Of a stretch of 64,000 nt of DNA, positions 6,401 to 64,000 are shown piece after piece. The DNA comes from Styela clava (lineage: Eukaryota): NCBI RefSeq assembly GCF_964204865.1, contig NC_135252.1, positions 11,098,001 through 11,162,000 on the forward strand. The letters run 5' to 3'. The translations under genes were made by a program, and so were the position numbers. Below the pieces are notes generated by a model, which worked only from the letters and a program-made list of their open reading frames with translations, searched no databases and was not told where the DNA came from. Each line of letters begins with the position of its first letter. The stretch's first letter is position 1.

Positions 6401-9328
6401 TTGCTTCTAAAATAAATCTTGTTGTATGAAATGAAATTAATTGAGATAATATAATCAAGCAGACAAAATGATTAGATCGGACTATTCAATCTAAGCTGCG
6501 TTGAAGACTGCTTTTCGTCAACCCGGACAGAAGTAGATTTTTGACGAAAGAAGTTTTAAAATAGATATTCGTAAACACAAATTTTCAAAATATTCCAAAT
6601 TTCTTTACGATCAATGGGTTCGACATTACAAATATGTATCCGATATAAACTCACATATCAGATCATTGATGATCATTCGTCAACGAAAAAAGAAACATTT
6701 AATTTCAAATGACTAAGATTAGACATTCCTTTTGGGGCAAATAAATCATCGAAGCATACTATGTATAAAAAAAAATGGTTCAAGAAAATATGGCGCTGCG
6801 TTAACCTATTCGGAAAAGAAGTGTAGCCTATTCATCTGTAACAGAATATCAAAAAAGATCTTGAAAGCTTTTACATTACGCCACCTGTACAATTTGCACT
6901 CCCTTCATCCCATTTACCATCACTGTTTGTATCATCATCAGTATTTGTGTCATTGCAAATTGCTTGCTTATCTCCATCGTTATAATATCCATTCAAGCAA
7001 GTAATATCACATGTATCATTGAAGTTATTGCTGGCTGAACAGTCCAATGACTGTGCATTTGTAATATTGAACGAATCAGGACACGTGATAGCTGAGGTAA
7101 AAATAATAGAATGTGATGAATTTACAGAAATCACATAAACTTTTACTTTGGTATCTTCATTTTAACTTAAATCTAGACTAAATTCTAAATTAAATATAAC
7201 ATGTTTTGGTTCAAATGAAGCTGTTTTGCATGTTAGTCATTCAAGATACCTAGTTGATATCTGAAATGGTACGATTTATGAATTTCTCATTTTTATAAGT
7301 AATTTTCTGATGCAGAACTTGTAGATAAAATTTCGAAATCGACTTCGTTTTATGAACGAAAATCCATCCGCCCGTGAGTTGTTTTTCAATTATTTTTTAA
7401 TGATATTTCTAAAAAATGACATGTTCAGTTTAGCAAATATATTCCACAACGGGTGTCTCCAATATGTCGTGTCCAACTTATCCCACTTGTCCCACGTGTA
7501 CAACTTGTAGGACACGTGGTACACGTGGGACAAGTGGGATACGTGGGACAAATGGGTGGGACAAGTGGGACACGACATTTTGGAGACACCGTTCCACAAC
7601 CTAATTAATTTTACAACTTTATCTACTGTTCTGATTTTCCCTTTATTATATTCAACACGTTTCTTTTTAATAATATTTCAAATAAGGTGACAGTCAAATA
7701 TTAGTTTGCAGGAAATTACCAAATATGCATGGCCATGGACATGGTAAAACTGTGTAATCACAATATTATCTAAACGATTTGAGCATTCCTGATTTAAATA
7801 GGTTTTATCATATTTGATGTTAGGAGGTATAGCTTAAAAGAGGTACTGTTTCAGATATTGACAGGTCCGGCTTAAAAATGTGTACAACGTTGTCGACAAA
7901 ACGCCAAGCATTTGTTGAGCTATGTATGACCAAAATTCATCTCTGACCAGAAGGTCAGAGTTCAACAAGTAAAACCGGGTATTGCAAGTTTTCATTATTA
8001 TAATTGATTCATTTATGAATATAGATTCATGTGAAATATATAGACAGTAAGAAATACGGTGCGTCTCCACTACATACTGGAGATTATATATATAGGTGTA
8101 ATAGTACTTTTGTGTAATTGTAACAACAAAAATATATCTGTTTACAAATATAATTGGTCATAACGCTTACTCGCCCAGAAATTGGTTATGTTTCCAAAGG
8201 CTGAAACCCGACTTGGTAAAATATCTAGTATTATTTAGGAGATAGTTGAGTGCCATGGCTTTAGAACCAGTAATATATTAAAAAGTTAAATGACTGATAC
8301 AGCGTGAGCATTCACTTAATTACCATCAAGTCTAAGATCTTGTTATAGTTTATTTAAAACACGAGAAACACTTGATTTGCCACGAAAAAGCACAATGTTA
8401 AATGTTCCCAATAAATAAATTAGTCTGCTATGTTCTGCATATGGGAAGCTGACTTTTTATTAGTTAATCTACAATCTTTCTTTGAGTAAAGGTTTGAGTA
8501 AGATTCTTGACTATTTTAAAGAGGAATCACTTCAGAATGCCATTCGTGATTTATTTGCCTTTGTATCATGATACTTTTCCTAAATATTAATAATAAATAT
8601 TATAATCATTAAATATCCAGTACCCACTGATAATAAGAAATTTGTACACTTCTAATATACCTACGTGCTGTGGTTTGAGGAACTGTAGTTGGACCTGGAT
8701 TGGAATAGACGTTGATTAGTATTCAAATATAAAAACTTTTCACCTGCTATGGTTTGAAATACTGTACTAGATAATATGGTTGATGCTTTGTCAGAATCTG
8801 GAATGGAATAGACATCGAATATAATATAACTATCCAAAATTAAAAACATTGCAATTCTTATATAAACCCACATACCTGCTGTGGTTTGATTTATTGTACG
8901 CGGTGGTATTGCTGATGCTTCGTCGGCCCCTGTGAATAAGAATCAAATAATCATAGCTATATTTGAACGGGTAGTAGGGAGAACCGCTACGAAAGTCAGC
9001 GCATCTAATTGAAAAGGCATGCTTATCCAAAGAGCTTTCTTTATATGTTGTTTTAATCATAAACAGTTTGCATTAGTTATTGTGTCAACTAGTTTTATTA
9101 GCTAAAAGACGAAGTTAATGTGATTAGCGATTACATAAACAATAGTATATTCCCTCAATTATACTGTTAGAAATCAAGCAGTCAAAATTATTGGAATATT
9201 TCAAATACCTGTTACAATCAATTTAGCTTTCATAACGGTTTGTTTGATTTTACAGAGAAAAATAGGAAAGACATACCTGTACATAGGTCGAATAGCAGCA
9301 GACCAACAATAATCAACTTCACATTCAT
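202..9328 (-). CDS. Gene A: sushi/CCP-repeat cell-surface or secreted protein (5' part; continues beyond the left edge)
   Basis: Leader exon 9277-9328 (MNVKLIIVGLLLFDLCT, donor GTATGT). Short phase-1 S/T/P-rich exons 8876-8929, 8744-8797, 8665-8694 and possibly 8171-8224. Intact phase-1 sushi exons 6885-7091, 5885-6088, 5282-5485 and 202-405, e.g. ITCPDSFNITNAQSLDCSASNNFNDTCDITCLNGYYNDGDKQAICNDTNTDDDTNSDGKWDEGSANCT. Joining the leader/mucin exons to the sushi exons is inferred from phase compatibility only. Confidence 0.6.
789..2433. mobile_element. Non-autonomous hAT (Charlie-like) DNA transposon
   Basis: Terminal inverted repeats CAGTGATTCCCAAAGT / AGTTTGGGAACCACTG and an 8-bp TSD GTTTAGGC/ATTTAGGC (7/8 match). 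The paralogous intron near 5067 shows the empty site. Confidence 0.8.
1016..1822 (+). mobile_element. Nested hAT element with a transposase C-terminal relic
   Basis: TIRs CAGTGGTCGGCAAA / TTTGCCGACCCCTG. The + strand at ~1500-1570 reads MFGSTYLCEQLFSKMDITKNKQK, typical of the hAT dimerisation domain. No clean TSD. Confidence 0.7.
2613..2815 (-). pseudogene. Degenerate sushi pseudo-exon
   Basis: Homologous to the neighbouring sushi exons and keeps its AG/GT ends. It has a 1-nt insertion after the first Cys, a small deletion and an in-frame TAA replacing the Gly of LDGYY. Confidence 0.8.
3097..3166 (-). CDS. Second signal-peptide (leader) exon inside the gene A sushi array
   Basis: ATG-MKVQFIFGKILWLNSFLVVLPCA-G|GTAATG, 70 nt, phase 1. 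Clear paralog of the gene B leader at 30037-30106. Confidence 0.65.
4803..4888 (-). pseudogene. Truncated sushi pseudo-exon (5' half only)
   Basis: Acceptor followed by ITCPDSL, a frameshift, then ITNSQISICTPNNNF..DKC, after which homology stops. Confidence 0.7.
5282..7091 (-). CDS. Three intact sushi exons (5282-5485, 5885-6088, 6885-7091)
   Basis: Each exon is 204-207 nt, phase 1-1, AG/GT-flanked, has six Cys and no stops. Confidence 0.85.
7450..7591. mobile_element. Palindromic MITE with 8-bp TSD
   Basis: Inverted ends CGGGTGTCTCCAATATGTCGTGTCC / GGACACGACATTTTGGAGACACCG, internal GTGGGACA repeats, and direct repeat TTCCACAA at 7442-7449 and 7592-7599. Confidence 0.8.
7720..7950 (-). pseudogene. 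Decayed copy of the leader exon and its upstream region
   Basis: Aligns by eye with 3097-3320. ATG has become AGG and the frame contains TAG and TGA. Confidence 0.5.
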
Positions 9329-9959
9329 ATCTGTTTGTCAATAAACTCGATATTTCAAAAAACACACTTAATTTGAAGGTTTCTCCAGTAATTCTAAACT
9401 GAACATAACTAAAATTTTGAAATCTGTCGTGAAATAAAAGGAAAAAAAAGTTGGACGATCAACTAATTCGTAACTGTACGATAACGTTCAGCATTTTAGT
9501 GACACGAGTTGAGCCATAATCAAAAAAGCTGGCCCCGAATTTGATAAAGTTGACAAGCTATCTTACTTGCAATTATTTCGACAACGGATTCAAAATTAAT
9601 GGACTAGTGGAAAATAGAACCACTGCATTACTGGCACATCTTTTCCGCCTAAAATATTTGGTCTGTCAATTCGAAATAAAAGTCATAGCTTCAGAACTTT
9701 TTTCAAAATCCCAGTGCTTGTTGTCAAGCTTGAGATTTCTAGGCTGGAATACCATATGATGAAGCCCAACTGGTGAACTGTGACACAAACTGTGGTACCT
9801 ACATCATGATATTTATTGATGTTCATTGAACAAAAACTGAATGATCGGTAAACTTGCTAACAATTTCTTTTTTCAAAGTTTAATCGCTATTTCAAACAGA
9901 CGACAGTTTTTTTTTTTAAAACTCTTTCTAAACATAGCTGACATATTAGTAGTAAAACA

Positions 9960-26100: not shown

Positions 26101-29100
26101 CAAAAAATTTTTTTAATTTGTGAAGACAATTCGTGTAACTGTGTCCAATTTGTGAAATTTTTGTTTGCCTCTCCACAACATCACTGTACCTGTACAATTT
26201 GCGCTTCCTTCATCCCAATTACCATCTCTATTTGTATCATTATTTTCATTTGAATCTGTGCATGTTGGTTGTTTATCTCCATCGTTATAATATCCATCCA
26301 AGCAAGTAATATCGCATGTATCATTGAAACTGATGCTGGTGCAGTTTGATTGTTGCGAATTTGAAATTATTGTGAATGAAACAGGACACGTGATAGCTAT
26401 GGTATATAGTAAAATTTTAATTACAAATATTTAAAAAATTATAAATCATCACTTTGTTATCTTTATTCAAATATGCAAATGAAGTAACTTTTAATAAACT
26501 TAGACACGTGCGATATTCTTTTATTACCAAAAATCCATCGAGACAAAAGGGGACGCATACATACACCAAAGATAACGATATTCATTTCTATATGTAATAT
26601 GCACTTCTTCGAAACAACTTGAAACAAAAACTAGACATATATTATACTGATACATCTTTTTCGTAATTATTTTGGTATATATTTTTGTGAATATCGCAAT
26701 CACAACCAAAACTTGAGGTATAGACAAAAAGGCTGGAAGCGAATCCGAAAGACAAGTTCATGCACATCGCTACAGATAACAGTTTGTATGAATTTTATGA
26801 ATAGAGAACCAATATCAAAAAAGCGTTTACAAGTTTTTTTTAAGATTACTTAACACAAGTATACATTCAAACACAGCTTTAATATTAAACTAAATGATGA
26901 TCGGTCATCAACAAATAATTCTTGCAATATACATGAAAATAGTCATTCCGATCGGGGGTAATATAACATTACAACACACTATTAAACAAAAATTTTTTTT
27001 AATTTTTGAAGACAATTCGTGTTCATGTGTCCAATTTGTGAAATTTTTGTTTGCCTCCCCACAACATCACTTCACCTGTACAATTTGCGCTTCCTTCATG
27101 CCAATTACCATCTCTATTTGTATCATTATTTTCATTTGAATCTGTGCATGTTGCTTGTTTATCTCCATCGTTATAATATCCATCCAAGCAAGTAATATCG
27201 CATGTATCATTGAAACTGATGCTGGTGCAGTTTGATTGTTGCGAATTTGAAATTATTGTGAATGAAACAGGACACGTGATAGCTATGGTATATAGTATAA
27301 TTTTAATTACAAATATTTAAAAAATTATAAATCATCACTTTGTTATCTTTATTCAAATATGCAAATGAAGTAACTTTTAATAAACTTAGACACGTGCGAT
27401 CATCTTTTATTACCAAAAATCCATCGAGACAAACATTAAATCATCTAAAAAGGGGACGCATACATACACCAAAGATAACGATATTCATTTCTACATATAA
27501 TATGCATTCCTTCGAAACAACTTGAAAAAAAAATCTAGACATATAATATACTGATACATCTTTTTCGTAATTAATTCGGTATATATTTTTGTGAATATCG
27601 CAATCACAACCAAAACTTGAGGTATGGACAAAAAGGCTGAAAGCGAATCCGAAAGATCAATTTTATGCACATCGCTATAGATAACAGTTTGTAAGCATTT
27701 TATGAATAGAGAAACAATATCAAAATAGTCTTCGCAAGTTTTTTCAACATATTTTAACACAAGTATACATTCAAACTTAGCTCTCATATCAAAATAAATG
27801 ATGATAAGCAATCAACAAATAATTCTTACAATATATATGAAAATAGCCATTCAGGCTGGGGGTAATATAACATCGCAACACGCTATTAAACAGGAAACTT
27901 GTTTGATTTGTGAAGACAATTCGTGGTTCCCCACAACATCACTTTACCTGTACAATTTGCGCTTCCTTCATCCCAATTACCATCCCTATTTGTATCATTA
28001 TTTTCATTTGAATCTGTGCACGTTGCTTGTTTATCTCCATCATTATAATATCCATCCAAGCAAGTAATATCGCATGTATCATTGAAACTGATGCTGGTGC
28101 AGTTTGATTGTTGCGAATTTGAAATTATTGTGAATGAAACAGGACACGTGATAGCTATGGTATATAGTAGAATGTTAAATACAAATATTTAAAAAATTAT
28201 AAATCATCACTTTGTTATCTTTATCCAAATATACAAAGAAAGTAACTTTCAATAAATTTAGACACGTGCGATCATCTTTTATTACCAAAAATCCATCGAG
28301 ACAAACATTAAATCATCTGAAACGGGGACGCATACATACACCAAAAATAACGATATTCATTTCTACATATAATATGCACTTCTTCGAAACAACTTGAAAC
28401 AAAAACTAGACATATAATATACTGATACATCTTTTTCGTAAATATTTTGGTATATATTTTTGTGAATATCGCAATCACAACCAAAACTTGAGGTATAGAC
28501 AAAAAGGCTGAAAGCGAATCCGAAAGATCAATTTCATGCACATCGCTATAGATAACAGTTTTTAAGAATTTTATGAATAGAGAACCAATATCAAAATAGC
28601 TTTTACAAGTTTCTTTAACATTTGTTTAACACAAATATACAATCAAACTTAGCTCTAATGTTAAAATAAATGATTATTAGCAATCAACAAATAATTCTTA
28701 CAATATATATGAAAATAGCCTTTCCGATTGGGGGTAATATAACATAGCAACATGTCACTATTAAACAAGAAAATGATTTGATCTGTGAACACAATTCGTG
28801 TAATTGTGTCCGATTTGTGAAATTTTTGTTTGCTTCTCCACAACATCACTTTACCTGTACAATTTGCGCTTCCTTCATTCCAATCACCATATTTATTTGT
28901 ATCATTATTTTCATTTGTGTCTTTGCATGTTGCTTGTTTATATCCATCGTTATAATATCCATCCAAGCAAGTAATATCGCATGTATCATTGTAACTATTG
29001 CTGGGGATGCATGTTGATTGTTGTGAATTTGCAATAAATGACGATTCAGGACACATGATAGCTAAGGTAGATAATAAAGATTATCGATATATAATATTAC

Positions 29101-30106
29101 GAAAACGGAGTTTAATGTTACCTTGTTGTATTCGTTCTACAATATGCTGAGTTTTGAAAATTTCATTTGGGACACTAACTTGATATCCGCTACAAAATTG
29201 TTTTTGATGTTAGTTTTTCGCCATTAAGATTTTATTTTAAAAAATAGTCCGGATGATATATTTCAAAACTGTTATCTACAAATCTTGATAATGGCATAAT
29301 AATGGTCATGAACCGAAAGATATGCCGTGCAATATTGAAACTGTACAAATTTAATTTGCATGTTCAAATCTGCGCCGAATGTCTGCAACTGTAATGGTGC
29401 TCTGTAAGCCATGAATTTTGTTCTTCCCTTTTAGTAATGTTCAACTCAACATCGAACACAGAAAAACACAATTACAAAATATTCACGTGGGGTTGTTTTA
29501 AAGATTTAAAAACATTAAAAAACGTAGTTGCCTTTACAAATCGGACTTTTATTCAAAAAATTATATCCGCCTTACAACTTTTGACAAACGAAAATGACAG
29601 AGATTATTGGAAATTGAAGTACAAAACGCTAACTACAATCATCAAGTTCTGTTTTTAACTTTGTTATATTCAGCATACCTTGACAGGTATCATTCCAATT
29701 ATTGTTATCCCACTCATCTTGTTTGATGCACGCAGCACTTCTTACAGAATTATTGAAATACCCATCATCACAAGTTATGTTGCAAATCGTTCCTACGTCA
29801 ACAGTGCCTATACAGTCCGTAGTACCGTGCAGTGGACTTGAAACAGTGCAGTTCTCGGCTGAATAACATAAGTTAAGTTCAGTATCGTTATGGAGAAACT
29901 TCGCAAGAATAATTGAAGAAGTGGAAAACAACTGGTTTAGAAAGTGAGAATTTCAACATCTATCATATTTCTTCCTAAAGATAGTTGAAATCAAGTTACA
30001 ACCGAATTATAGTTCGAATTAAATCACTAAACATACCTGAGCATTGCAATACAACCAGAAACCAGTTTAACCATACTATTTTCAAGAAAACGGTTTGACC
30101 TTTCAT
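11166..30106 (-). CDS. Gene B: ~1751-aa type I membrane protein (signal peptide, 13 sushi, 3 Ig-like, C-type lectin, FN3, RPTP-like juxtamembrane domain, TM, short tail); two donors are non-canonical, so possibly a defective allele
   Basis: Exons: 30037-30106 (MKGQTVFLKIVWLNWFLVVLQCS); 29679-29858; twelve 207-nt sushi exons within 19029-29061; 18527-18841; 18011-18301; 16408-16716; 16125-16279; micro-exon 15976-15988; 15713-15904; 15413-15642; 14830-15012; 13604-13802; 13325-13439; 12721-12852; 12247-12485; TM 11714-11795 (PYLLWIIGVVIPILVIIAAVLGFLYY); last exon 11166-11232 (TVTKRNIVVYNMFGLGDSTPV*). The phases chain into one 5256-nt ORF. Confidence 0.75.
11422..11532. mobile_element. Small palindromic MITE family (related copies ~33313-33425 and ~57367-57405)
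   Basis: Inverted ends GGTACTCCTGAAGTATGCGTACCAAGATG / CATCTTGGTGCGCATTCTTCGGGAGGTTCC with an internal AACCCTAACC. Related sequence recurs twice more in the window. Confidence 0.65.
12247..15642 (-). CDS. Gene B FN3 and RPTP-like membrane-proximal exons
   Basis: FN3 hallmarks: LNVNWRP..LTPDTQYLIK and ITWSY..NYT|VTI..MEPNSKYTSNIFAVSCAGKG. These are followed by YGPVSCVFVVV..FTITLGKG..YRYYV and an RKKR furin-type site. Confidence 0.75.
15713..16279 (-). CDS. Gene B C-type lectin-like domain exons
   Basis: YYILSDDNLAYTESENKCESVDGHLVYITTEDIQEYL ... YYIGL..EWRW..DCV..GWKNTSCKENYKYICQ. The EPN/QPD and WND sugar-binding motifs are absent. Confidence 0.85.
16408..18841 (-). CDS. Gene B three Ig-like domain exons
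   Basis: 18011-18301 (VVCDAFGVPEPDFKW..DNGTYRC) and 16408-16716 (LTCYMDANP..IYW..VACQANN) are typical Ig domains. 18527-18841 has LTIENLTTADAGEW but no Cys. Confidence 0.85.
19029..29061 (-). repeat. Tandem array of 12 sushi exons with ~0.9-kb exon+intron period
   Basis: Exons 19029-19235, 19935-20141, 20834-21040, 21705-21911, 22611-22817, 23513-23719, 24416-24622, 25288-25494, 26190-26396, 27076-27282, 27948-28154 and 28855-29061. Periods are 871-907 bp. All exons are open and phase 1-1. Confidence 0.95.
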
Positions 30107-59668: not shown

Positions 59669-62600
59669 TCAATCATCATTCTCTACGAAACAATTCTTGT
59701 CTTCACTTTTCTTTGATTTCTTTACTCTGGTGAAATGTTAATAAGATATCTTATAATTCATTTTTATGTATCTGTAATTTTTTTTATAATTACACTTCTA
59801 AAAATGAAAATATATATTGATATTTGACTTTGCATCGAAGTATCGATAAATATCAGATATTTTGCTTTAAACCAGTATCTGTATTGAAGTTCATTATCGC
59901 TTAAACGTCCTGTTGCGAATGCAGAAAAGTGTTGCAGTGTATAAAAAATCATTTTAAGTGACATTTCACGGTTGCGAGCCTATCTTTACACAACAACGTA
60001 AGCGATGCTATTGACTGACTATATGTGTCTGGTTCGGCTTAGGCTTACCATGCTATTCCATTCAGGTATAGATCATGGATATGGTGTTCGATATTAAGAC
60101 TAACTCACAAAGTACACTCTATCATTATTTAAACTCCGTTTTTAATTTAATACTTACATGGTATATAAATCGACTGGCTTCGATTCCGTTTGAACTTCAG
60201 TAGGTTGAACATTGGGTTTATAGAGTCTTAAAAGATAACAATTCTATTTTTTATAACATTTATATGCCTATATACAAGCCAGTGTTATTGCACACACTGT
60301 TTTTGTGAAATTGATGAATACAGAAATGATGCATCACCAGTTTCCTCTTTCCCAGTTACCTTCTCGAGGAAGCGTTACCTATACGTACCACAGTACATAG
60401 AAAGAGGTTGACCTACTGGCAGAATTATCTGAACAAATTTCCTGTCGGTGTCAAATACAGGTTTTCCAGCCTTATATGCGGAAATTCTATGACGTAATAC
60501 TGCGCATTGGTAGTGTTTAAATTGTTAACGCAAATTGTATTTCAAACATGTAATTATTGCATTGCACGATATAAATATATATATATAAGTAATAAAGCCT
60601 ATATTCGTGCCATGCGACTGATGAAAGTTTCTGTCATTTTATTATCCATTGTCCATTTATCCATTTATTATCAAATATTGGAGACGAGTTAACTATATGT
60701 TGTGTAGTTCAGTGTTTAGAAACTCGTTTATTTATTTTCAATATCACCTGTCATAAAGTCCATCTTCACCCACATTTTCTTGCCCAGCTTGGGTATGAAC
60801 GAATTTTAAATTCAACTGTTGATACTCTGTATCATCGACGTCACTATTTTTATTCAATACCCTGAAACATATATAATTTTTGTCACATCGGAACAGTTTT
60901 TAGGTTTCAAGTTCGAAATAAAAATGAGTGTAGAATTTTCGATCTAGATTCTAGAATCACAATGCTTTGCTCTAGAATGTATTATGAATATCCATTTAAC
61001 CTATACTATATCCTTTAGGAATTTAAAAATATAACTGTGAATGATACTTTCAACACTAATGATAAAATGCGAGAGATGCACACAGTGTCACCGGCTGTAA
61101 TGTTTGCAAAATTTATAAAATTATGCAAATCCGAAGCTAAAGGTTCCGTTTGTTGTTTTGTTTATCAAATTTTTTGAAAACGTAATCCATCATAAACAAT
61201 CATAACTTATACCGTTATCGGTCATTAAATGTCTATATCTGAATTATTTATATATTGATGTTTGCCCACGCGTATGATGCTTCTTTGTCCTCTGGTGATG
61301 ATGGTTCATCCGCTTCATCAGCTTGATTGTGAACTGGTTGTAAATTTAGCTGTTGGTAGTTTGAATTATCAGGTATTTTATTTTTGTCCAATTCCCTAAA
61401 ATACAAACAAATACAGTTCAAGAAACGTCCAACGTATCCTGGCGATCCCGAAACACGATGTTTCGCACTAAACGTGTTTACTAAAATTTGATTTATCTTT
61501 AGTAGTTCTTTCCAAATATTTCTGTGAAATGGCTTCGAACAATTTATGTTTTGAATAGAAACCACCAACTGGATTATTTAAATTAAAATTATTATTCAGA
61601 TTGATTCGTCATATTCAAGCAAGTGTATGTTTTGTGAAATTGTGTTTGGGCAAAATTCTAATAAAACCGCACGGAAGTAAAATTAAAATATGCATCACAG
61701 TCTTGGTGCTTTATCTTGATAAACTGGCTAAAAACAATTAATTTAGTAAAAGCAATTTTGTGCCTAACCAAATCAGTTGTTAAATTACTATACTGGCCAT
61801 ATATTGGTAGACGTTAGCTCACGCATAAAACATATCTTCGCCCTTTGACTGTTCATTGTCCACAGAAAATCCAGCAACGTCTTCAGCAGGCAAGAAACCA
61901 TCATCATCAATTATTGCGTATTCGCTTCAGAATAAAAATAATCTGATTTGTAAACCATATTTGTATGTTCTTCTCCATTTGAGATATTGATTAAGTGTTA
62001 TTTGAAACGAAGTAAAAACTCAAACCAGAAGTTTAAGTTGAATAGCCTTGGCCAAATAACAAGTTACAGCTAATTTAATTATTCAAGGAATTTTCCGTTT
62101 AATGTATTAGTAGAAACATTGTCATGATCTTGAATAGTCGAACGATGAAACCAAGATGTATGTGCCAAGTGCCATAGTGCATATATGCATGATGTAATCA
62201 ATTTACATAAAAATATATCATCATACTTATTAGGCAAAAAAACGGGCTTTCGATTATGAAGAACAACTTCTTCATATGTTCCATTGAAAGTTCCATTTGG
62301 TACAGGTGCTTTTCTGTAATAAATTGCAATATAGTTAAGTATTGTTGGATACCACATACCAATAGTACATTTTAATATGCGACATGGCAGGCAGTAAGAT
62401 AATAATTCTTGGATAGAATTAGGTCCCGTTACCAGTAGTTAAAAGAGAAAAGGGCGACTTTGGTCCTGTAAACACGAACACAACAACAACTTAAAAAAAT
62501 TGTACTCATACTTTATGTTAGAAATAATGAAATTCAAAAAGAAAAATTTTTTTTCGATTTTGTAAAATATTTGATTGTTGGTAAGGAAGTAAAGAAATTA

Positions 62601-62690
62601 ATAATACGTGACTACCCTTCTTTGATATATGTCTAATTGTCTACAACTTACTCAACATTTCGCTTGTCAGCCGGTTCGTTTGTTTTCTGT
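59669..62690 (-). CDS. Gene E (3' part): tyrosine-motif-rich cytoplasmic tail with tandem ITAM-like motifs
   Basis: Phase-2 exons 62652-62690, 62227-62313, 61823-61924, 61270-61395, 60748-60861, 60158-60226 and 59669-59726 chain into ..GTYEEV..NEYAII..DNEQSKGEDMFYAELDKNKIPDNSNYQQL..EPSSPEDKEASYAVLNKNSDVDDTEYQQL..GEDGLYDRL..DLYTIVKKSKK..DD*. The TM and ectodomain are presumed to lie beyond the right edge. Confidence 0.75.
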
Positions 62691-62867
62691 CTGTAAATGG
62701 AATATTGTTGTGAGTTACTTGTTTGTTCGATGAAGGTAACATGATGTTTATTTTTTGTTTTACCTTATATAGAAAAAATAATATGCAATTCAGATGACAG
62801 CAATTAAAACAAACACTCCTATGACCGCGCCGGCTATGGGACCTACAAATATAAAAAAAAAATCAAC

Positions 62868-62955
62868 ATGGTATATAAATCGACTGGCTTAGATTCCGTT
62901 TGAACTTTAGTAGGTTGAACATTGGGTTTATAGAGTCTTAAAAGATAACAATTCT
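62868..62955 (-). repeat. Near-identical displaced copy of gene E exon 60158-60226
   Basis: About 88 bp matching 60158-60246 with two substitutions. The acceptor is retained and the donor is GTTGAT. Confidence 0.85.
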
Positions 62956-63412
62956 AGAATCACAATTAGGGTTTTGTTTTTTATCAATTCTAAAAAAAAC
63001 ATCGTGTTTTAAATCAAATATTTTCTGTATTATTTGTATTTTTTATTGAAATACCCCCTGCATCGCCGCGAAACTACGCCAAAACGTTGCATTCTGGCAG
63101 ATGCACACGCAGCCGGAATTATAATTTCAAAATATAAGTAAAATTTTATAATTTGACTTTCGCTTCTATTGCGTACATTTATCGCCATGCTTGTATCTCC
63201 ACCAAAGTCATAAGATTATACCCGGAATGTTTAGCCGAGATATCAGAGAGACGTTTTGAGTAAGAAAAATTATGAAAATTAGCTCACGAGCCCACTACAA
63301 AAGCAATTAGATCAAGTGCAGCCCTCCGGCAAAACGAGTGGGTTGCGATAATGAAGAATATGCTCATATCGGCGGTAATCTACTAATATAAACGACGAGA
63401 CACCCTAGCGGC

Positions 63413-63603
63413 TAGGGTCACCATATTTAAAAAAGCAAAATTCCGGACAGTGCATGCTATTTTCATGACCTCGTAGTAAAAAATATGCGCACGGTACGAA
63501 ATAACAATGTTCTGTATTATCAGATTCCGGACATTTGAGCGTTTTTTAAATTCTTTCCGGACGCAAAATTTGACCCTAAATTCTGGACGGTATGGCAACC
63601 CTA
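63413..63603. mobile_element. Small hAT-like MITE
   Basis: Inverted ends TAGGGTCACCATA / TATGGCAACCCTA and internal TTCCGGAC repeats. No clear TSD. Confidence 0.55.
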
Positions 63604-64000
63604 CCCTAGCTTAGCCTATGCTAATTGTAGGAGTCCTCGGATGCAAAGACGCCACAACTAATCTGTTATGACGCCTAAATATGGATTTCGAGTTCATGTA
63701 TTGACATTTTCCTCATAAAATGAGGGCATTATTACGGCTAATACTGTCCGGTTAATTTATGCTTAGCATGCTTTGTTTTCAAGGTTAAAGTGATGGAGCT
63801 TTTCAAGGTTATACGAACTCATTTATTCGATCGCATTTTCGCGATTTCAATTTTGGCAAGATGGTTTCGTCGCAACAGGCTCGTTCAATTAATGGCTTAT
63901 CGGTTGCGTCTTACTGCGCCAACCACTGAACTACAGCTTGAGAAGGTGTACATAAGCCTCTATCGATATTTGTGGCGTTTTGAAAGATTTATTGCAAATA

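What the first reader, a model, noticed from the sequence alone, without database searches (positions are those of the whole stretch)
59669..62690. Invertebrate receptor tail with two complete ITAM-like motifs built by exon duplication, plus hemITAM-like and Csk-type sites
Seen: splicing the phase-2 exons gives D-x7-D-x2-YAEL-x10-YQQL and E-x7-E-x2-YAVL-x10-YQQL. Each motif forms only across an exon junction (..FYA|EL, ..SYA|VL), and exons 61270-61395 and 60748-60861 are paralogs. The tail also has TYEEV, EYAII, EDGLYDRL and a terminal YTIVKK. Known: this matches the Reth ITAM pattern (D/E-x7-D/E-x2-YxxL-x6-12-YxxL) read by Syk/ZAP70 tandem SH2 domains. EDG-YxxL resembles the Dectin-1/CLEC-2 hemITAM, and YxxVxK resembles Csk-SH2 sites. 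Inference: an activating, CD3zeta-like multi-ITAM receptor whose ITAM number could be tuned by skipping symmetric phase-2 exons. The ORF track does not show it.
Basis: partly seen in the sequence, partly recalled or inferred. Interest (0 to 1): 0.85.

Follow-up and report, generated by a model that had tools for sequence, protein, structure and literature searches.

The report
Sea-squirt receptor tail with ITAM-like motifs
The stretch is the 3' end of an unnamed single-pass receptor gene of the sea squirt Styela clava; its spliced tail carries two ITAM-like tyrosine motifs, but their function is untested, half of the exons are a spare duplicate behind a dead membrane exon, and similar ascidian receptors are already known.

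Summary
Eight minus-strand exons (62842-59669) splice in phase 2 into a 198-aa tail with nine tyrosines, eight of them YxxL/I/V. It contains D-x7-D-x2-YAEL-x10-YQQL and E-x7-E-x2-YAVL-x10-YQQL, each formed across an exon junction.

A paralogue 11.7 kb upstream (gene B, RefSeq LOC120341785) has the same eight exon lengths and splice sites, and its protein model uses exactly these junctions. One RNA contig confirms the exon 6 to exon 7 junction.

- The organism is the tunicate Styela clava.
- A transmembrane exon sits at 62842-62764 and carries an in-frame TGA (GGA in the other two copies).
- Window 60955-62857 is the downstream copy of a tandem duplication.

The intact copy, with signal peptide, mucin-like stalk and membrane exon, lies just past the window end and is annotated as LOC144421113, a model that stops by read-through. 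Only exons 6-8 are unique to the window.

The motifs are ITAM-like, not classical. The spacer is 10 residues, not 6-9, and the intron is phase 2, not 0. The genome does encode a Syk/ZAP-70-type kinase. Precedents exist in ascidians (Halocynthia A74, Botryllus FcoR). Function and exon-skipping "tuning" are untested.

The scan's first-stage readers had already noted the same tail design on gene B.

The parts
62957..64000 (.). Dispersed repeat (transposable-element-like). It runs on to about 64148 beyond the window and replaces the part of the upstream duplicate that would hold exon 6.
   Evidence: at least 80 matches across the genome at 80-91% identity; homology between the two duplicate copies stops at 64149/60955 and resumes at 62956/60246.
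62868..62936 (-). e7', the copy of exon 7 that closes the upstream duplicate. The frame is open and the acceptor is kept, but the donor is weakened (GTTGAT).
   Evidence: 97.8% identical to 60156-60246. Sequence; two differences from e7.
62764..62842 (-). TM*, the transmembrane exon of the downstream duplicate, with an in-frame TGA at 62792-62790. It is a pseudo-exon.
   Evidence: PIAGAVIGVFVLIAVI*IAYYFFYI; the upstream copy and gene B have GGA at this codon; 5 of the 6 differences are derived in this copy, dN/dS about 1.3; the DNA contig of X1 (record 7) covers the site without a variant.
62652..62690 (-). e2' (RQKTNEPADKRNV), the juxtamembrane cassette of the downstream duplicate.
62227..62313 (-). 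e3' (…NGTYEEVVLHNRKPVFLPN) of the downstream duplicate.
61823..61924 (-). e4' (NEYAII … DNEQSKGEDMFYA|). It supplies the acidic residues and the Y-A of the first ITAM-like motif.
   Evidence: an X7 RNA contig covers the whole exon with 0 mismatches, joined at 61924 to upstream e3 (ext 65369). The upstream e4 differs by only 1 nt.
61270..61395 (-). e5' (|ELDKNKIPDNSNYQQL … EDKEASYA|). It completes motif 1 and starts motif 2. Its donor is GTGGGC.
   Evidence: three copies in the genome, 98% nt identity to gene B. No RNA contig covered it.
61248..61250 (-). Stop codon reached if the e5' donor is read through (…SYAWANINI*).
   Evidence: ORF 61248-61568. The RefSeq model of gene A, P0002, ends in just this way in the upstream copy.
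60748..60861 (-). e6 (|VLNKNSDVDDTEYQQL … GEDGLYD|), a paralogue of e5 and unique to the window for gene A.
   Evidence: two copies in the genome, here and in gene B.. X5 RNA contig record 9 matches exactly 60748-60861 and splices on to e7.
60158..60226 (-). e7 (|RLYKPNVQPTEVQTESKPVDLYT|).
   Evidence: joint 60748 to 60226 with GT..AG ends on the minus strand; an X7 contig lies on 60159-60222; 94% identical to gene B.
59669..59726 (-). e8, the last coding exon (|IVKKSKKSEDKNCFVENDD, stop at 59671-59669).
   Evidence: Same length and frame in gene B, and used in the RefSeq model P0004.

Best explanation
The finding is the 3' part of the Styela clava gene annotated as LOC144421113 ('gene A'). 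Gene A is a type-I membrane protein with a signal peptide, a Ser/Thr-rich mucin-like stalk, one transmembrane helix and a tyrosine-rich tail. It belongs to a three-gene cluster whose other members (genes B and C) carry one Ig domain.

A 2.7-kb tandem duplication copied the block from the transmembrane exon to exon 7. The upstream copy, just past the window end, keeps the live transmembrane exon but lost exon 6 to a repeat insertion. The downstream copy, in the window, has a dead transmembrane exon but holds the only exons 6, 7 and 8. A full-length mRNA must therefore start upstream and end in the window.

The tail is most likely a phosphotyrosine docking platform. Src-type kinases would phosphorylate the YxxL/I/V sites. 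The two YxxL-x10-YQQL pairs could then bind a tandem-SH2 kinase of the Syk/ZAP-70 type, which the genome encodes, giving an activating signal.

Shown: exon structure, duplication, dead TM exon, motifs, the e6-e7 splice, presence of a Syk-type gene. Inferred: phosphorylation, Syk binding, the activating sign, and which copy of e4/e5 is used.
For: Gene structure:
- All eight exons have the same lengths and splice sites in gene B, and exons are 84-98% identical against 57-85% for introns.
- The RefSeq protein P0004 of gene B equals my spliced model residue for residue.
- tblastn places P0002 (gene A) on ext 69884-64452, directly upstream of the window exons.

Duplication and decay: blastn and alignment, TGA against GGA, lineage counts.

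RNA: an e6-to-e7 joint with exact exon ends, and an upstream-e3-to-e4 joint.

Motifs beyond chance. Tail dN/dS between A and B is 0.42. Only 1 of 18 Y and Y+3 positions varies, against 45 of 198 columns overall, P = 0.05.

Reader kinase: a 615-aa ORF with SH2-SH2-kinase whose best full-length solved relatives are SYK and ZAP-70.

Ascidian precedents: Halocynthia hemocyte glycoprotein with two ITAMs that is tyrosine-phosphorylated (review PMC5465252), and the Botryllus FcoR family (PMC12582321).
Against: - The spacer between the two YxxL modules is 10, outside the 6-9 or 7 given for ITAMs. No motif fits the 6-8 spacing.
- The splitting intron is phase 2, whereas the typical vertebrate split is phase 0.
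- Pfam gives no ITAM hit at E <= 10.
- The second tyrosines sit in SNYQQL and TEYQQL, which also fit ITIM and ITSM-like patterns.
- No tail homologue was found outside S. clava, so there is no deep conservation to lean on.
- RNA support is two low-depth contigs from runs only guessed to be RNA. No contig covers e5, so neither ITAM-forming junction (e4/e5, e5/e6) was seen directly in gene A.
- The RefSeq model for gene A stops by read-through after upstream e5.
Confidence: 0.6

Rival explanations
1. The tail is inhibitory or dual-purpose rather than activating. The two YQQL sites (SNYQQL, TEYQQL), 42 residues apart, would act as ITIM/ITSM-type sites that recruit SHP- or SHIP-type phosphatases, as in PECAM-1-like receptors.
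For: SNYQQL fits [S/I/V/L]xYxx[I/V/L] (definition; sequence). TEYQQL is close to TxYxx[V/I]. The spacer of 10 is off the classical ITAM range. Ascidians have SHP-1 and SHIP homologues (PMC12582321).
Against: Each YQQL is preceded at a fixed 10 residues by another YxxL with acidic residues at -3 and -11, twice, which ITIMs do not need. Gene C of the same cluster has the clearer ITIM (LHYHEI) on a short tail. That fits a paired arrangement in which the long tail is the activating partner.
Confidence: 0.2
2. The YxxPhi sites are mainly sorting signals (AP-2 mu2-type endocytosis or lysosomal targeting) of a mucin-type surface protein, with no immunoreceptor-like signalling.
For: Eight of nine tyrosines are YxxL/I/V, which is also the tyrosine-based sorting consensus (established knowledge). 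Gene A has a mucin-only ectodomain.
Against: One or two signals suffice for sorting. The repeated acidic-x7-acidic-x2-YxxL-x10-YxxL pattern and the acidic context typical of Src-family substrates are not explained by sorting.
Confidence: 0.12
3. Window exons e2'-e5' (62690-61270), and so the first motif as located by the reader, are silent relics of the duplication. The mRNA uses upstream e2-e5 and joins upstream e5 directly to e6, or stops by read-through. Only e6-e8 of the finding are functional. This concerns structure and is compatible with any of the functional readings.
For: TM* is dead. The RefSeq model uses upstream e2-e5. No RNA contig lay on e2', e3' or e5'. The nearest-acceptor rule favours upstream e4.
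Against: The one contig that spans e3 to e4 matches the window copy of e4 with 0 mismatches, while the upstream copy would give 1. Exons e3'-e5' differ from the upstream copies by 2.5% against about 6-7% in the introns and have no stops or frameshifts. Both arguments are weak: one rests on a single SNP, the other could reflect gene conversion.
Confidence: 0.45

Closest known systems
Classical vertebrate ITAM subunits (CD3 chains, TCR zeta, CD79a/b, FcR gamma, DAP12)
   Same: Two YxxL modules with an acidic residue at -3 of the first Tyr. [quoted passage not shown] Extra motifs arise by adding an exon, as in Xenopus FcR gamma (same paper). A Syk/ZAP-70-type kinase is present in the genome.
   Different: Spacer is 10, not 7 (6-9). 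The intron is phase 2, not phase 0 (PMC2110893). There is no acidic residue in the transmembrane helix. The protein has its own mucin or Ig ectodomain instead of being a small adaptor. No sequence homology was detected.
Halocynthia roretzi hemocyte membrane glycoprotein with two ITAMs (Takahashi et al. 1997, cited in PMC5465252)
   Same: An ascidian of the same order (Stolidobranchia, from my own knowledge). It is a membrane glycoprotein whose tail has two ITAMs, and it is tyrosine-phosphorylated and linked to PI3K and calcium signalling in hemocytes.
   Different: Its sequence could not be fetched here, so homology is untested. It is a 160-kDa protein (size from my memory), against about 30-45 kDa of polypeptide here.
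Botryllus schlosseri fester co-receptors (FcoR), PMC12582321
   Same: From the same ascidian family (Styelidae, from my own knowledge). They are clustered, polymorphic IgSF type-I receptors whose tails carry ITIM, hemITAM and 'core' YxxI/L/V motifs. Intron retention gives premature stops that remove motifs, which resembles the read-through form of gene A.
   Different: FcoR ectodomains are Ig-Sushi-Ig-Ig, whereas here there is one Ig (B, C) or none (A). FcoRs are reported with hemITAMs, not paired YxxL motifs. No sequence similarity was found in the databases searched.
Drosophila Draper and Hydractinia Alr tails (invertebrate ITAM receptors)
   Same: Invertebrate receptors carrying their own ITAM-type motif, read by Syk/Shark kinases (PMC9546547). 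Draper's spacer is also longer than the classical one (11, from my memory).
   Different: The ectodomains are unrelated, and there is no shared exon design on record.

Membership tests
Classical ITAM (Reth motif) | Two YxxL/I modules in one tail | tested here: met
   YAEL…YQQL and YAVL…YQQL, identical in gene B and its second allele.
Classical ITAM (Reth motif) | Spacer of 7 (6-9) residues between the modules | tested here: not met
   The spacer is 10 in both motifs. There were 0 matches to the 6-8 pattern.
Classical ITAM (Reth motif) | D/E/N at -3 of the first Tyr, with further acidic residues upstream | tested here: met
   D-M-F-Y and E-A-S-Y. The full D/E-x7-D/E-x2-Y pattern occurs twice.
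Classical ITAM (Reth motif) | [quoted passage not shown] | tested here: met
   YA|EL at e4/e5 and YA|VL at e5/e6. The feature is stated in PMC4536121.
Classical ITAM (Reth motif) | The splitting intron is phase 0 | tested here: not met
   The intron is phase 2: the codon of the +1 residue is split after its second base. Phase 0 is called typical in PMC2110893.
Classical ITAM (Reth motif) | Match to Pfam's ITAM profile | tested here: not met
   No ITAM family appears among hits at E <= 10 for P0004 or P0002. This is a weak test, because the profile is short and the filters are strict.
Classical ITAM (Reth motif) | Doubly phosphorylated motif binds the tandem SH2 of a Syk-family kinase | not testable with these tools
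   Only the presence of the partner was shown: an SH2-SH2-kinase ORF at G000:C5:24185212-24187059 (-), closest to SYK and ZAP-70.
ITAM adaptor subunits (CD3 zeta-like) | Very short ectodomain and an acidic residue in the transmembrane helix | tested here: not met
   The helix PIAGAVVGVFVLLAVIGIAFYFFY has no D or E. The ectodomain is about 135 aa of mucin-like stalk (A) or Ig plus stalk (B).
hemITAM (Dectin-1/CLEC-2 type) | [E/D][E/D][E/D]xYxxL, a single YxxL | tested here: not met
   GEDGLYDRL has only two acidic residues, at -4 and -3, and G at -2. Gene B has DDEVLYNRL, shifted by one. The definition is from PMC12582321. This is likeness only.
ITIM | [S/I/V/L]xYxx[I/V/L] | tested here: met
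   SNYQQL fits. The other eight tyrosines do not have S/I/V/L at -2. Matching a six-residue pattern is weak evidence.
Botryllus FcoR family | Ig-Sushi-Ig-Ig ectodomain, single TM, tyrosine-motif tail | tested here: not met
   There is one Ig domain in B and C and none in A, and no Sushi. Only the tail type is shared. FcoR sequences were not at hand for alignment.
Halocynthia two-ITAM hemocyte glycoprotein | Sequence homology | not tested
   The sequence and the original paper are not held. The exon-5 search of 1.84 billion proteins found only S. clava proteins.

The most novel reading that the evidence does not exclude
The tail may be an evolvable cassette system. Every cassette ends in Y-x and begins with x-L/V in phase 2. 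Any duplication, loss or skipping of a cassette therefore keeps the frame and rebuilds a YxxPhi at the new junction, so the number of ITAM-like units can change in one step. The tandem duplication seen here, and the e5/e6 paralogy, would be such steps. Because vertebrate ITAMs are split at the same Yx|xL place, the design could share ancestry with the vertebrate ITAM exon pair in the chordate ancestor.
Probability: 0.12. Interest if true: 0.8.

Novelty: new member of a known kind. Interest (0 to 1): 0.5.

Why it matters
Tunicates are the closest living relatives of vertebrates. The origin of the ITAM signalling module used by antigen and Fc receptors is unresolved.

This locus offers a concrete, small and testable tunicate receptor pair. 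The long tail has two ITAM-like units, the sister gene has an ITIM-like short tail, and the genome encodes a Syk-type kinase. The motif-splitting intron sits at the same place as in vertebrates but in another phase. If the motifs bind Syk despite the 10-residue spacer, that would widen the working definition of an ITAM and give a handle on activating receptors of ascidian blood cells.

The work also corrects the public gene model, which stops short of exons 6-8.

If the motifs do not bind Syk, this is an ordinary lineage-specific receptor tail.

Tried and rejected
- **YTIVKK as contiguous DNA.** I searched for it and found none.
- **Tail homologues outside the species.** Exon 5 against 1.84 billion representatives, whole gene B protein and its tail alone returned only S. 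clava proteins. One unrelated repeat protein (P0003) and a weak Ig hit to Xenopus myomesin were rejected as chance or domain-only matches.
- **Family size.** I checked for a larger family in the genome and found only three copies of e5 and two of e6.
- **tRNA-derived head in the repeat at 62800-64000.** None was found.
- **Which duplicate copy is constrained.** dN/dS and lineage counts had too few changes (11 in e2-e5) to decide. Only TM* is clearly decayed.
- **Original Halocynthia paper and sequence.** Not held.
- I redid it from coordinates.
- **Joined window model.** It was never sent to a search, fold or family tool. Exons were searched singly by reference, public protein ids were used for whole-protein searches, and the joined translation was made only inside scripts from the held files for motif counting.
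- **First thought on the organism.** A cnidarian Alr-type locus, rejected once the organism was identified.
Full report
**What is in the sequence.**

The window has no N and is 33% G+C. On the minus strand between 62842 and 59669 lie eight short exons with AG/GT borders:
- TM* 62842-62764
- e2 62690-62652
- e3 62313-62227
- e4 61924-61823
- e5 61395-61270
- e6 60861-60748
- e7 60226-60158
- e8 59726-59669

The TM exon starts in phase 1. All other borders are phase 2. Joined inside a script from the held files, e2-e8 give a 198-aa acidic tail with nine tyrosines: YEEV, YAII, YAEL, YQQL, YAVL, YQQL, YDRL, YKPN and YTIV. So are YD|RL and YT|IV. Exons e4-e7 thus each end in Y-x, and e5-e8 each begin with x-L/V.

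YTIVKK exists only across e7/e8 (one search found no contiguous copy), and 14 residues follow it, so it is not terminal.

**Is it more than chance?**

I ran 200,000 residue shuffles of the tail:

| Pattern | Share of shuffles |
|---|---|
| Full acidic-x7-acidic-x2-YxxL/I-x6-12-YxxL/I, at least once | 0.06% |
| Full pattern, at least twice | none |
| Bare YxxL/I-x6-12-YxxL/I, at least twice | 0.04% |
| At least 8 of 9 Tyr with L/I/V at +3 | 0.0005% |

Two caveats apply. The pattern was chosen after seeing the sequence. The two motifs sit on paralogous exons, so they count as one invention plus a duplication.

The e5/e6 paralogy is real but old. BLASTP gives 14/26 identical, pairwise E = 1e-8. 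In searches of the whole 377-Mb genome, each exon recovers the other as the only extra hit.

**Organism and gene.**

A search of 1.84 billion representative proteins with exon 5 alone, by reference, found two real relatives. Both are RefSeq proteins of the ascidian Styela clava.
- P0001 and P0004 are LOC120341785 ('gene B', 398 aa): signal peptide, one Ig domain (Pfam Ig_2), Ser/Thr-rich stalk, TM, tail.
- P0002 is LOC144421113 ('gene A', 285 aa): signal peptide, mucin-like stalk with no Ig, TM, tail.
- A third cluster member, P0005 (LOC144420837, 'gene C'), shares B's Ig ectodomain at 58% identity. It has a short, unrelated tail with LHYHEI and YSNV.

The window is G000:C3:11098001-11162000. 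I fetched the next 20 kb and number it on from the window as 'ext' coordinates.

**Support for the splice model.**

Gene B's tail lies at ext 74417-71380. Aligned with the window tail, all eight exons have identical lengths and conserved splice sites, including the odd GTGGGC donor of e5. Exons are 84-98% identical, while introns are 57-85% identical and full of indels. The RefSeq protein of gene B is identical to my spliced translation of that locus, so the public model uses exactly these junctions. Tail dN/dS between A and B is 0.42.

Window 60955-62857 is 93-94% identical to ext 64149-65997. The 91 bases 62866-62956 are a 98% copy of 60156-60246, that is, of exon 7. The duplicated unit therefore ran from the TM exon to just past e7.

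In the upstream copy, the stretch that should hold e6 is replaced by about 1.2 kb of a dispersed repeat (window 62957 to ext about 64148, at least 80 matches genome-wide).

In the downstream (window) copy, the TM exon reads …LIAVI-TGA-IAYY…, where both the upstream copy and gene B have GGA. Five of the six differences in that exon arose in the window copy. A DNA contig covers the site without a variant, but it probably comes from the assembly's own sample.

P0002 maps to ext 69884-64452. It uses upstream TM and e2-e5 and then reads through the GTGGGC donor to …SYAWANINI-stop. Exons e6-e8 exist only in the window.

**RNA.**

No listed run is on record as RNA. Seven are guessed to be RNA. I laid three of those and one DNA run on 6 kb, window 59650 to ext 65649. 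Two contigs matter.
- **X5 record 9.** It matches exactly 60748-60861 (e6), with 2 other letters. It splices to 60226 downstream (e7) with GT..AG ends on the minus strand. It has 27 unplaced letters upstream. Gene B's e6 is only 85% identical, so this contig comes from gene A. Gene A transcripts therefore reach the window, and the RefSeq model is incomplete or only one of several isoforms.
- **X7 record 18.** It joins upstream e3 (ending at ext 65369) to e4 at 61924, with 0 mismatches on both sides. The upstream e4 differs from the window e4 by one synonymous base. The contig thus formally favours the window copy, but one SNP in a different and very polymorphic individual cannot settle it. The RNA donor might even carry an unduplicated haplotype.

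**How it most likely works.**

The tail is acidic and has repeated YxxL/I/V sites in acidic context. That is the usual look of Src-family substrates that then dock SH2 proteins (established knowledge). The two YxxL-x10-YQQL units have acidic residues at -3 and -11. They are the best candidates for bivalent binding by a tandem-SH2 kinase.

The genome has one such kinase: a 615-aa intronless ORF at C5:24185212-24187059 (-). It has two SH2 domains and a tyrosine-kinase domain, and its best full-length solved relatives are SYK and ZAP-70.

Conservation gives mild support. Across gene A (both copies), gene B and B's second allele, 1 of 18 Y and Y+3 positions varies, against 45 of 198 columns overall (P = 0.05). 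Phosphorylation, Syk binding and the activating sign are all inferred.

**Comparison with what is known.**

Classical ITAMs are given as D/E/NxxYxxL/I-x7-YxxL/I, or with spacers of 6-9. Here the spacer is 10 in every copy, which fits only the wide 6-12 pattern.

[quoted passage not shown] That hallmark is met here. However, the vertebrate split is typically phase 0 (PMC2110893), and here it is phase 2, one base away. Pfam reports no ITAM hit.

The TM helix has no acidic residue and the protein has its own ectodomain, so it is not a CD3-zeta-type adaptor. EDGLYDRL has two, not three, acidic residues, and they are shifted relative to the hemITAM definition. SNYQQL also fits the ITIM pattern. The Csk reading of YTIV rests on memory and could not be tested.

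Two ascidian precedents exist.
- A Halocynthia roretzi hemocyte glycoprotein with two ITAMs is tyrosine-phosphorylated and signals through PI3K and calcium (review PMC5465252).
- The Botryllus FcoR family consists of clustered polymorphic IgSF receptors with ITIM, hemITAM and core YxxI/L/V motifs, in which intron retention removes motifs (PMC12582321). FcoRs have an Ig-Sushi-Ig-Ig ectodomain, which these genes lack.

No tail homologue outside S. clava was found.

**Exon-skipping idea.**

The design would allow it. All tail cassettes are phase 2-2, and any junction rebuilds YxxPhi. No evidence for it was found, though. The two RefSeq isoforms of gene B differ by a 31-aa stalk cassette, not in the tail. 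The read-through form (one motif, no C-terminal half) is the only tail variant on record.

**Verdict.**

This is a lineage-specific ascidian receptor tail with ITAM-like, not classical, motifs. Earlier first-stage notes of this scan on the adjoining DNA (s1-829419, s1-829519, s1-829456) describe the same tail design on gene B, the mucin-only gene A and the different tail of gene C. I checked these against the public proteins, and they hold.

The joined window model was not sent to any search tool. Exons were searched singly by reference.

Noticed in passing
window 62957-64000 (runs on to about 64148 beyond the window): A dispersed repeat with at least 80 matches across the genome at 80-91% identity. 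Most copies lack the middle part (window about 63410-63602). It sits where exon 6 of the upstream duplicate should be. ARAGORN finds no tRNA-like head.
   Followed up: partly
L005 about 8135-9477 (ext 82135-83477), minus strand: Gene C (P0005, LOC144420837) shares gene B's Ig ectodomain (58% identity). It has a short, unrelated tail with LHYHEI (ITIM pattern) and YSNV (YxN). Next to the long-tailed gene B, it looks like a paired activating/inhibitory receptor arrangement.
   Followed up: partly
gene B, L004/L005 (ext 71380 to about 76600): RefSeq isoforms X1 (429 aa) and X2 (398 aa) differ by a 31-aa stalk cassette. The allele from the older assembly (P0001) is only 94% identical to P0004, and its exon-3 part is identical to gene A's. 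This suggests high polymorphism or gene conversion between A and B.
   Followed up: partly
L007 713-2560 (-) = G000:C5:24185212-24187059: An intronless 615-aa ORF with SH2-SH2-tyrosine kinase architecture, closest to SYK and ZAP-70 among full-length solved structures. The lack of introns is unusual for this family and might mark a retrogene.
   Followed up: partly
window 61395-61270 and the intron before it, against ext 73002-72877: Exon 5 is 98% identical between genes A and B, and the intron before it is 85% identical. The rest of the tail is about 85% in exons and 57-70% in introns. This looks like a gene-conversion tract, or unusually strong constraint, around the segment that holds the end of motif 1 and the start of motif 2.
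   Followed up: no
window 11166-30106: Earlier first-stage notes on this window describe a long mosaic receptor gene with 12 near-identical sushi exons, Ig and C-type lectin parts. I did not examine it. If true, the tail locus lies in a receptor-rich neighbourhood.
   Followed up: no
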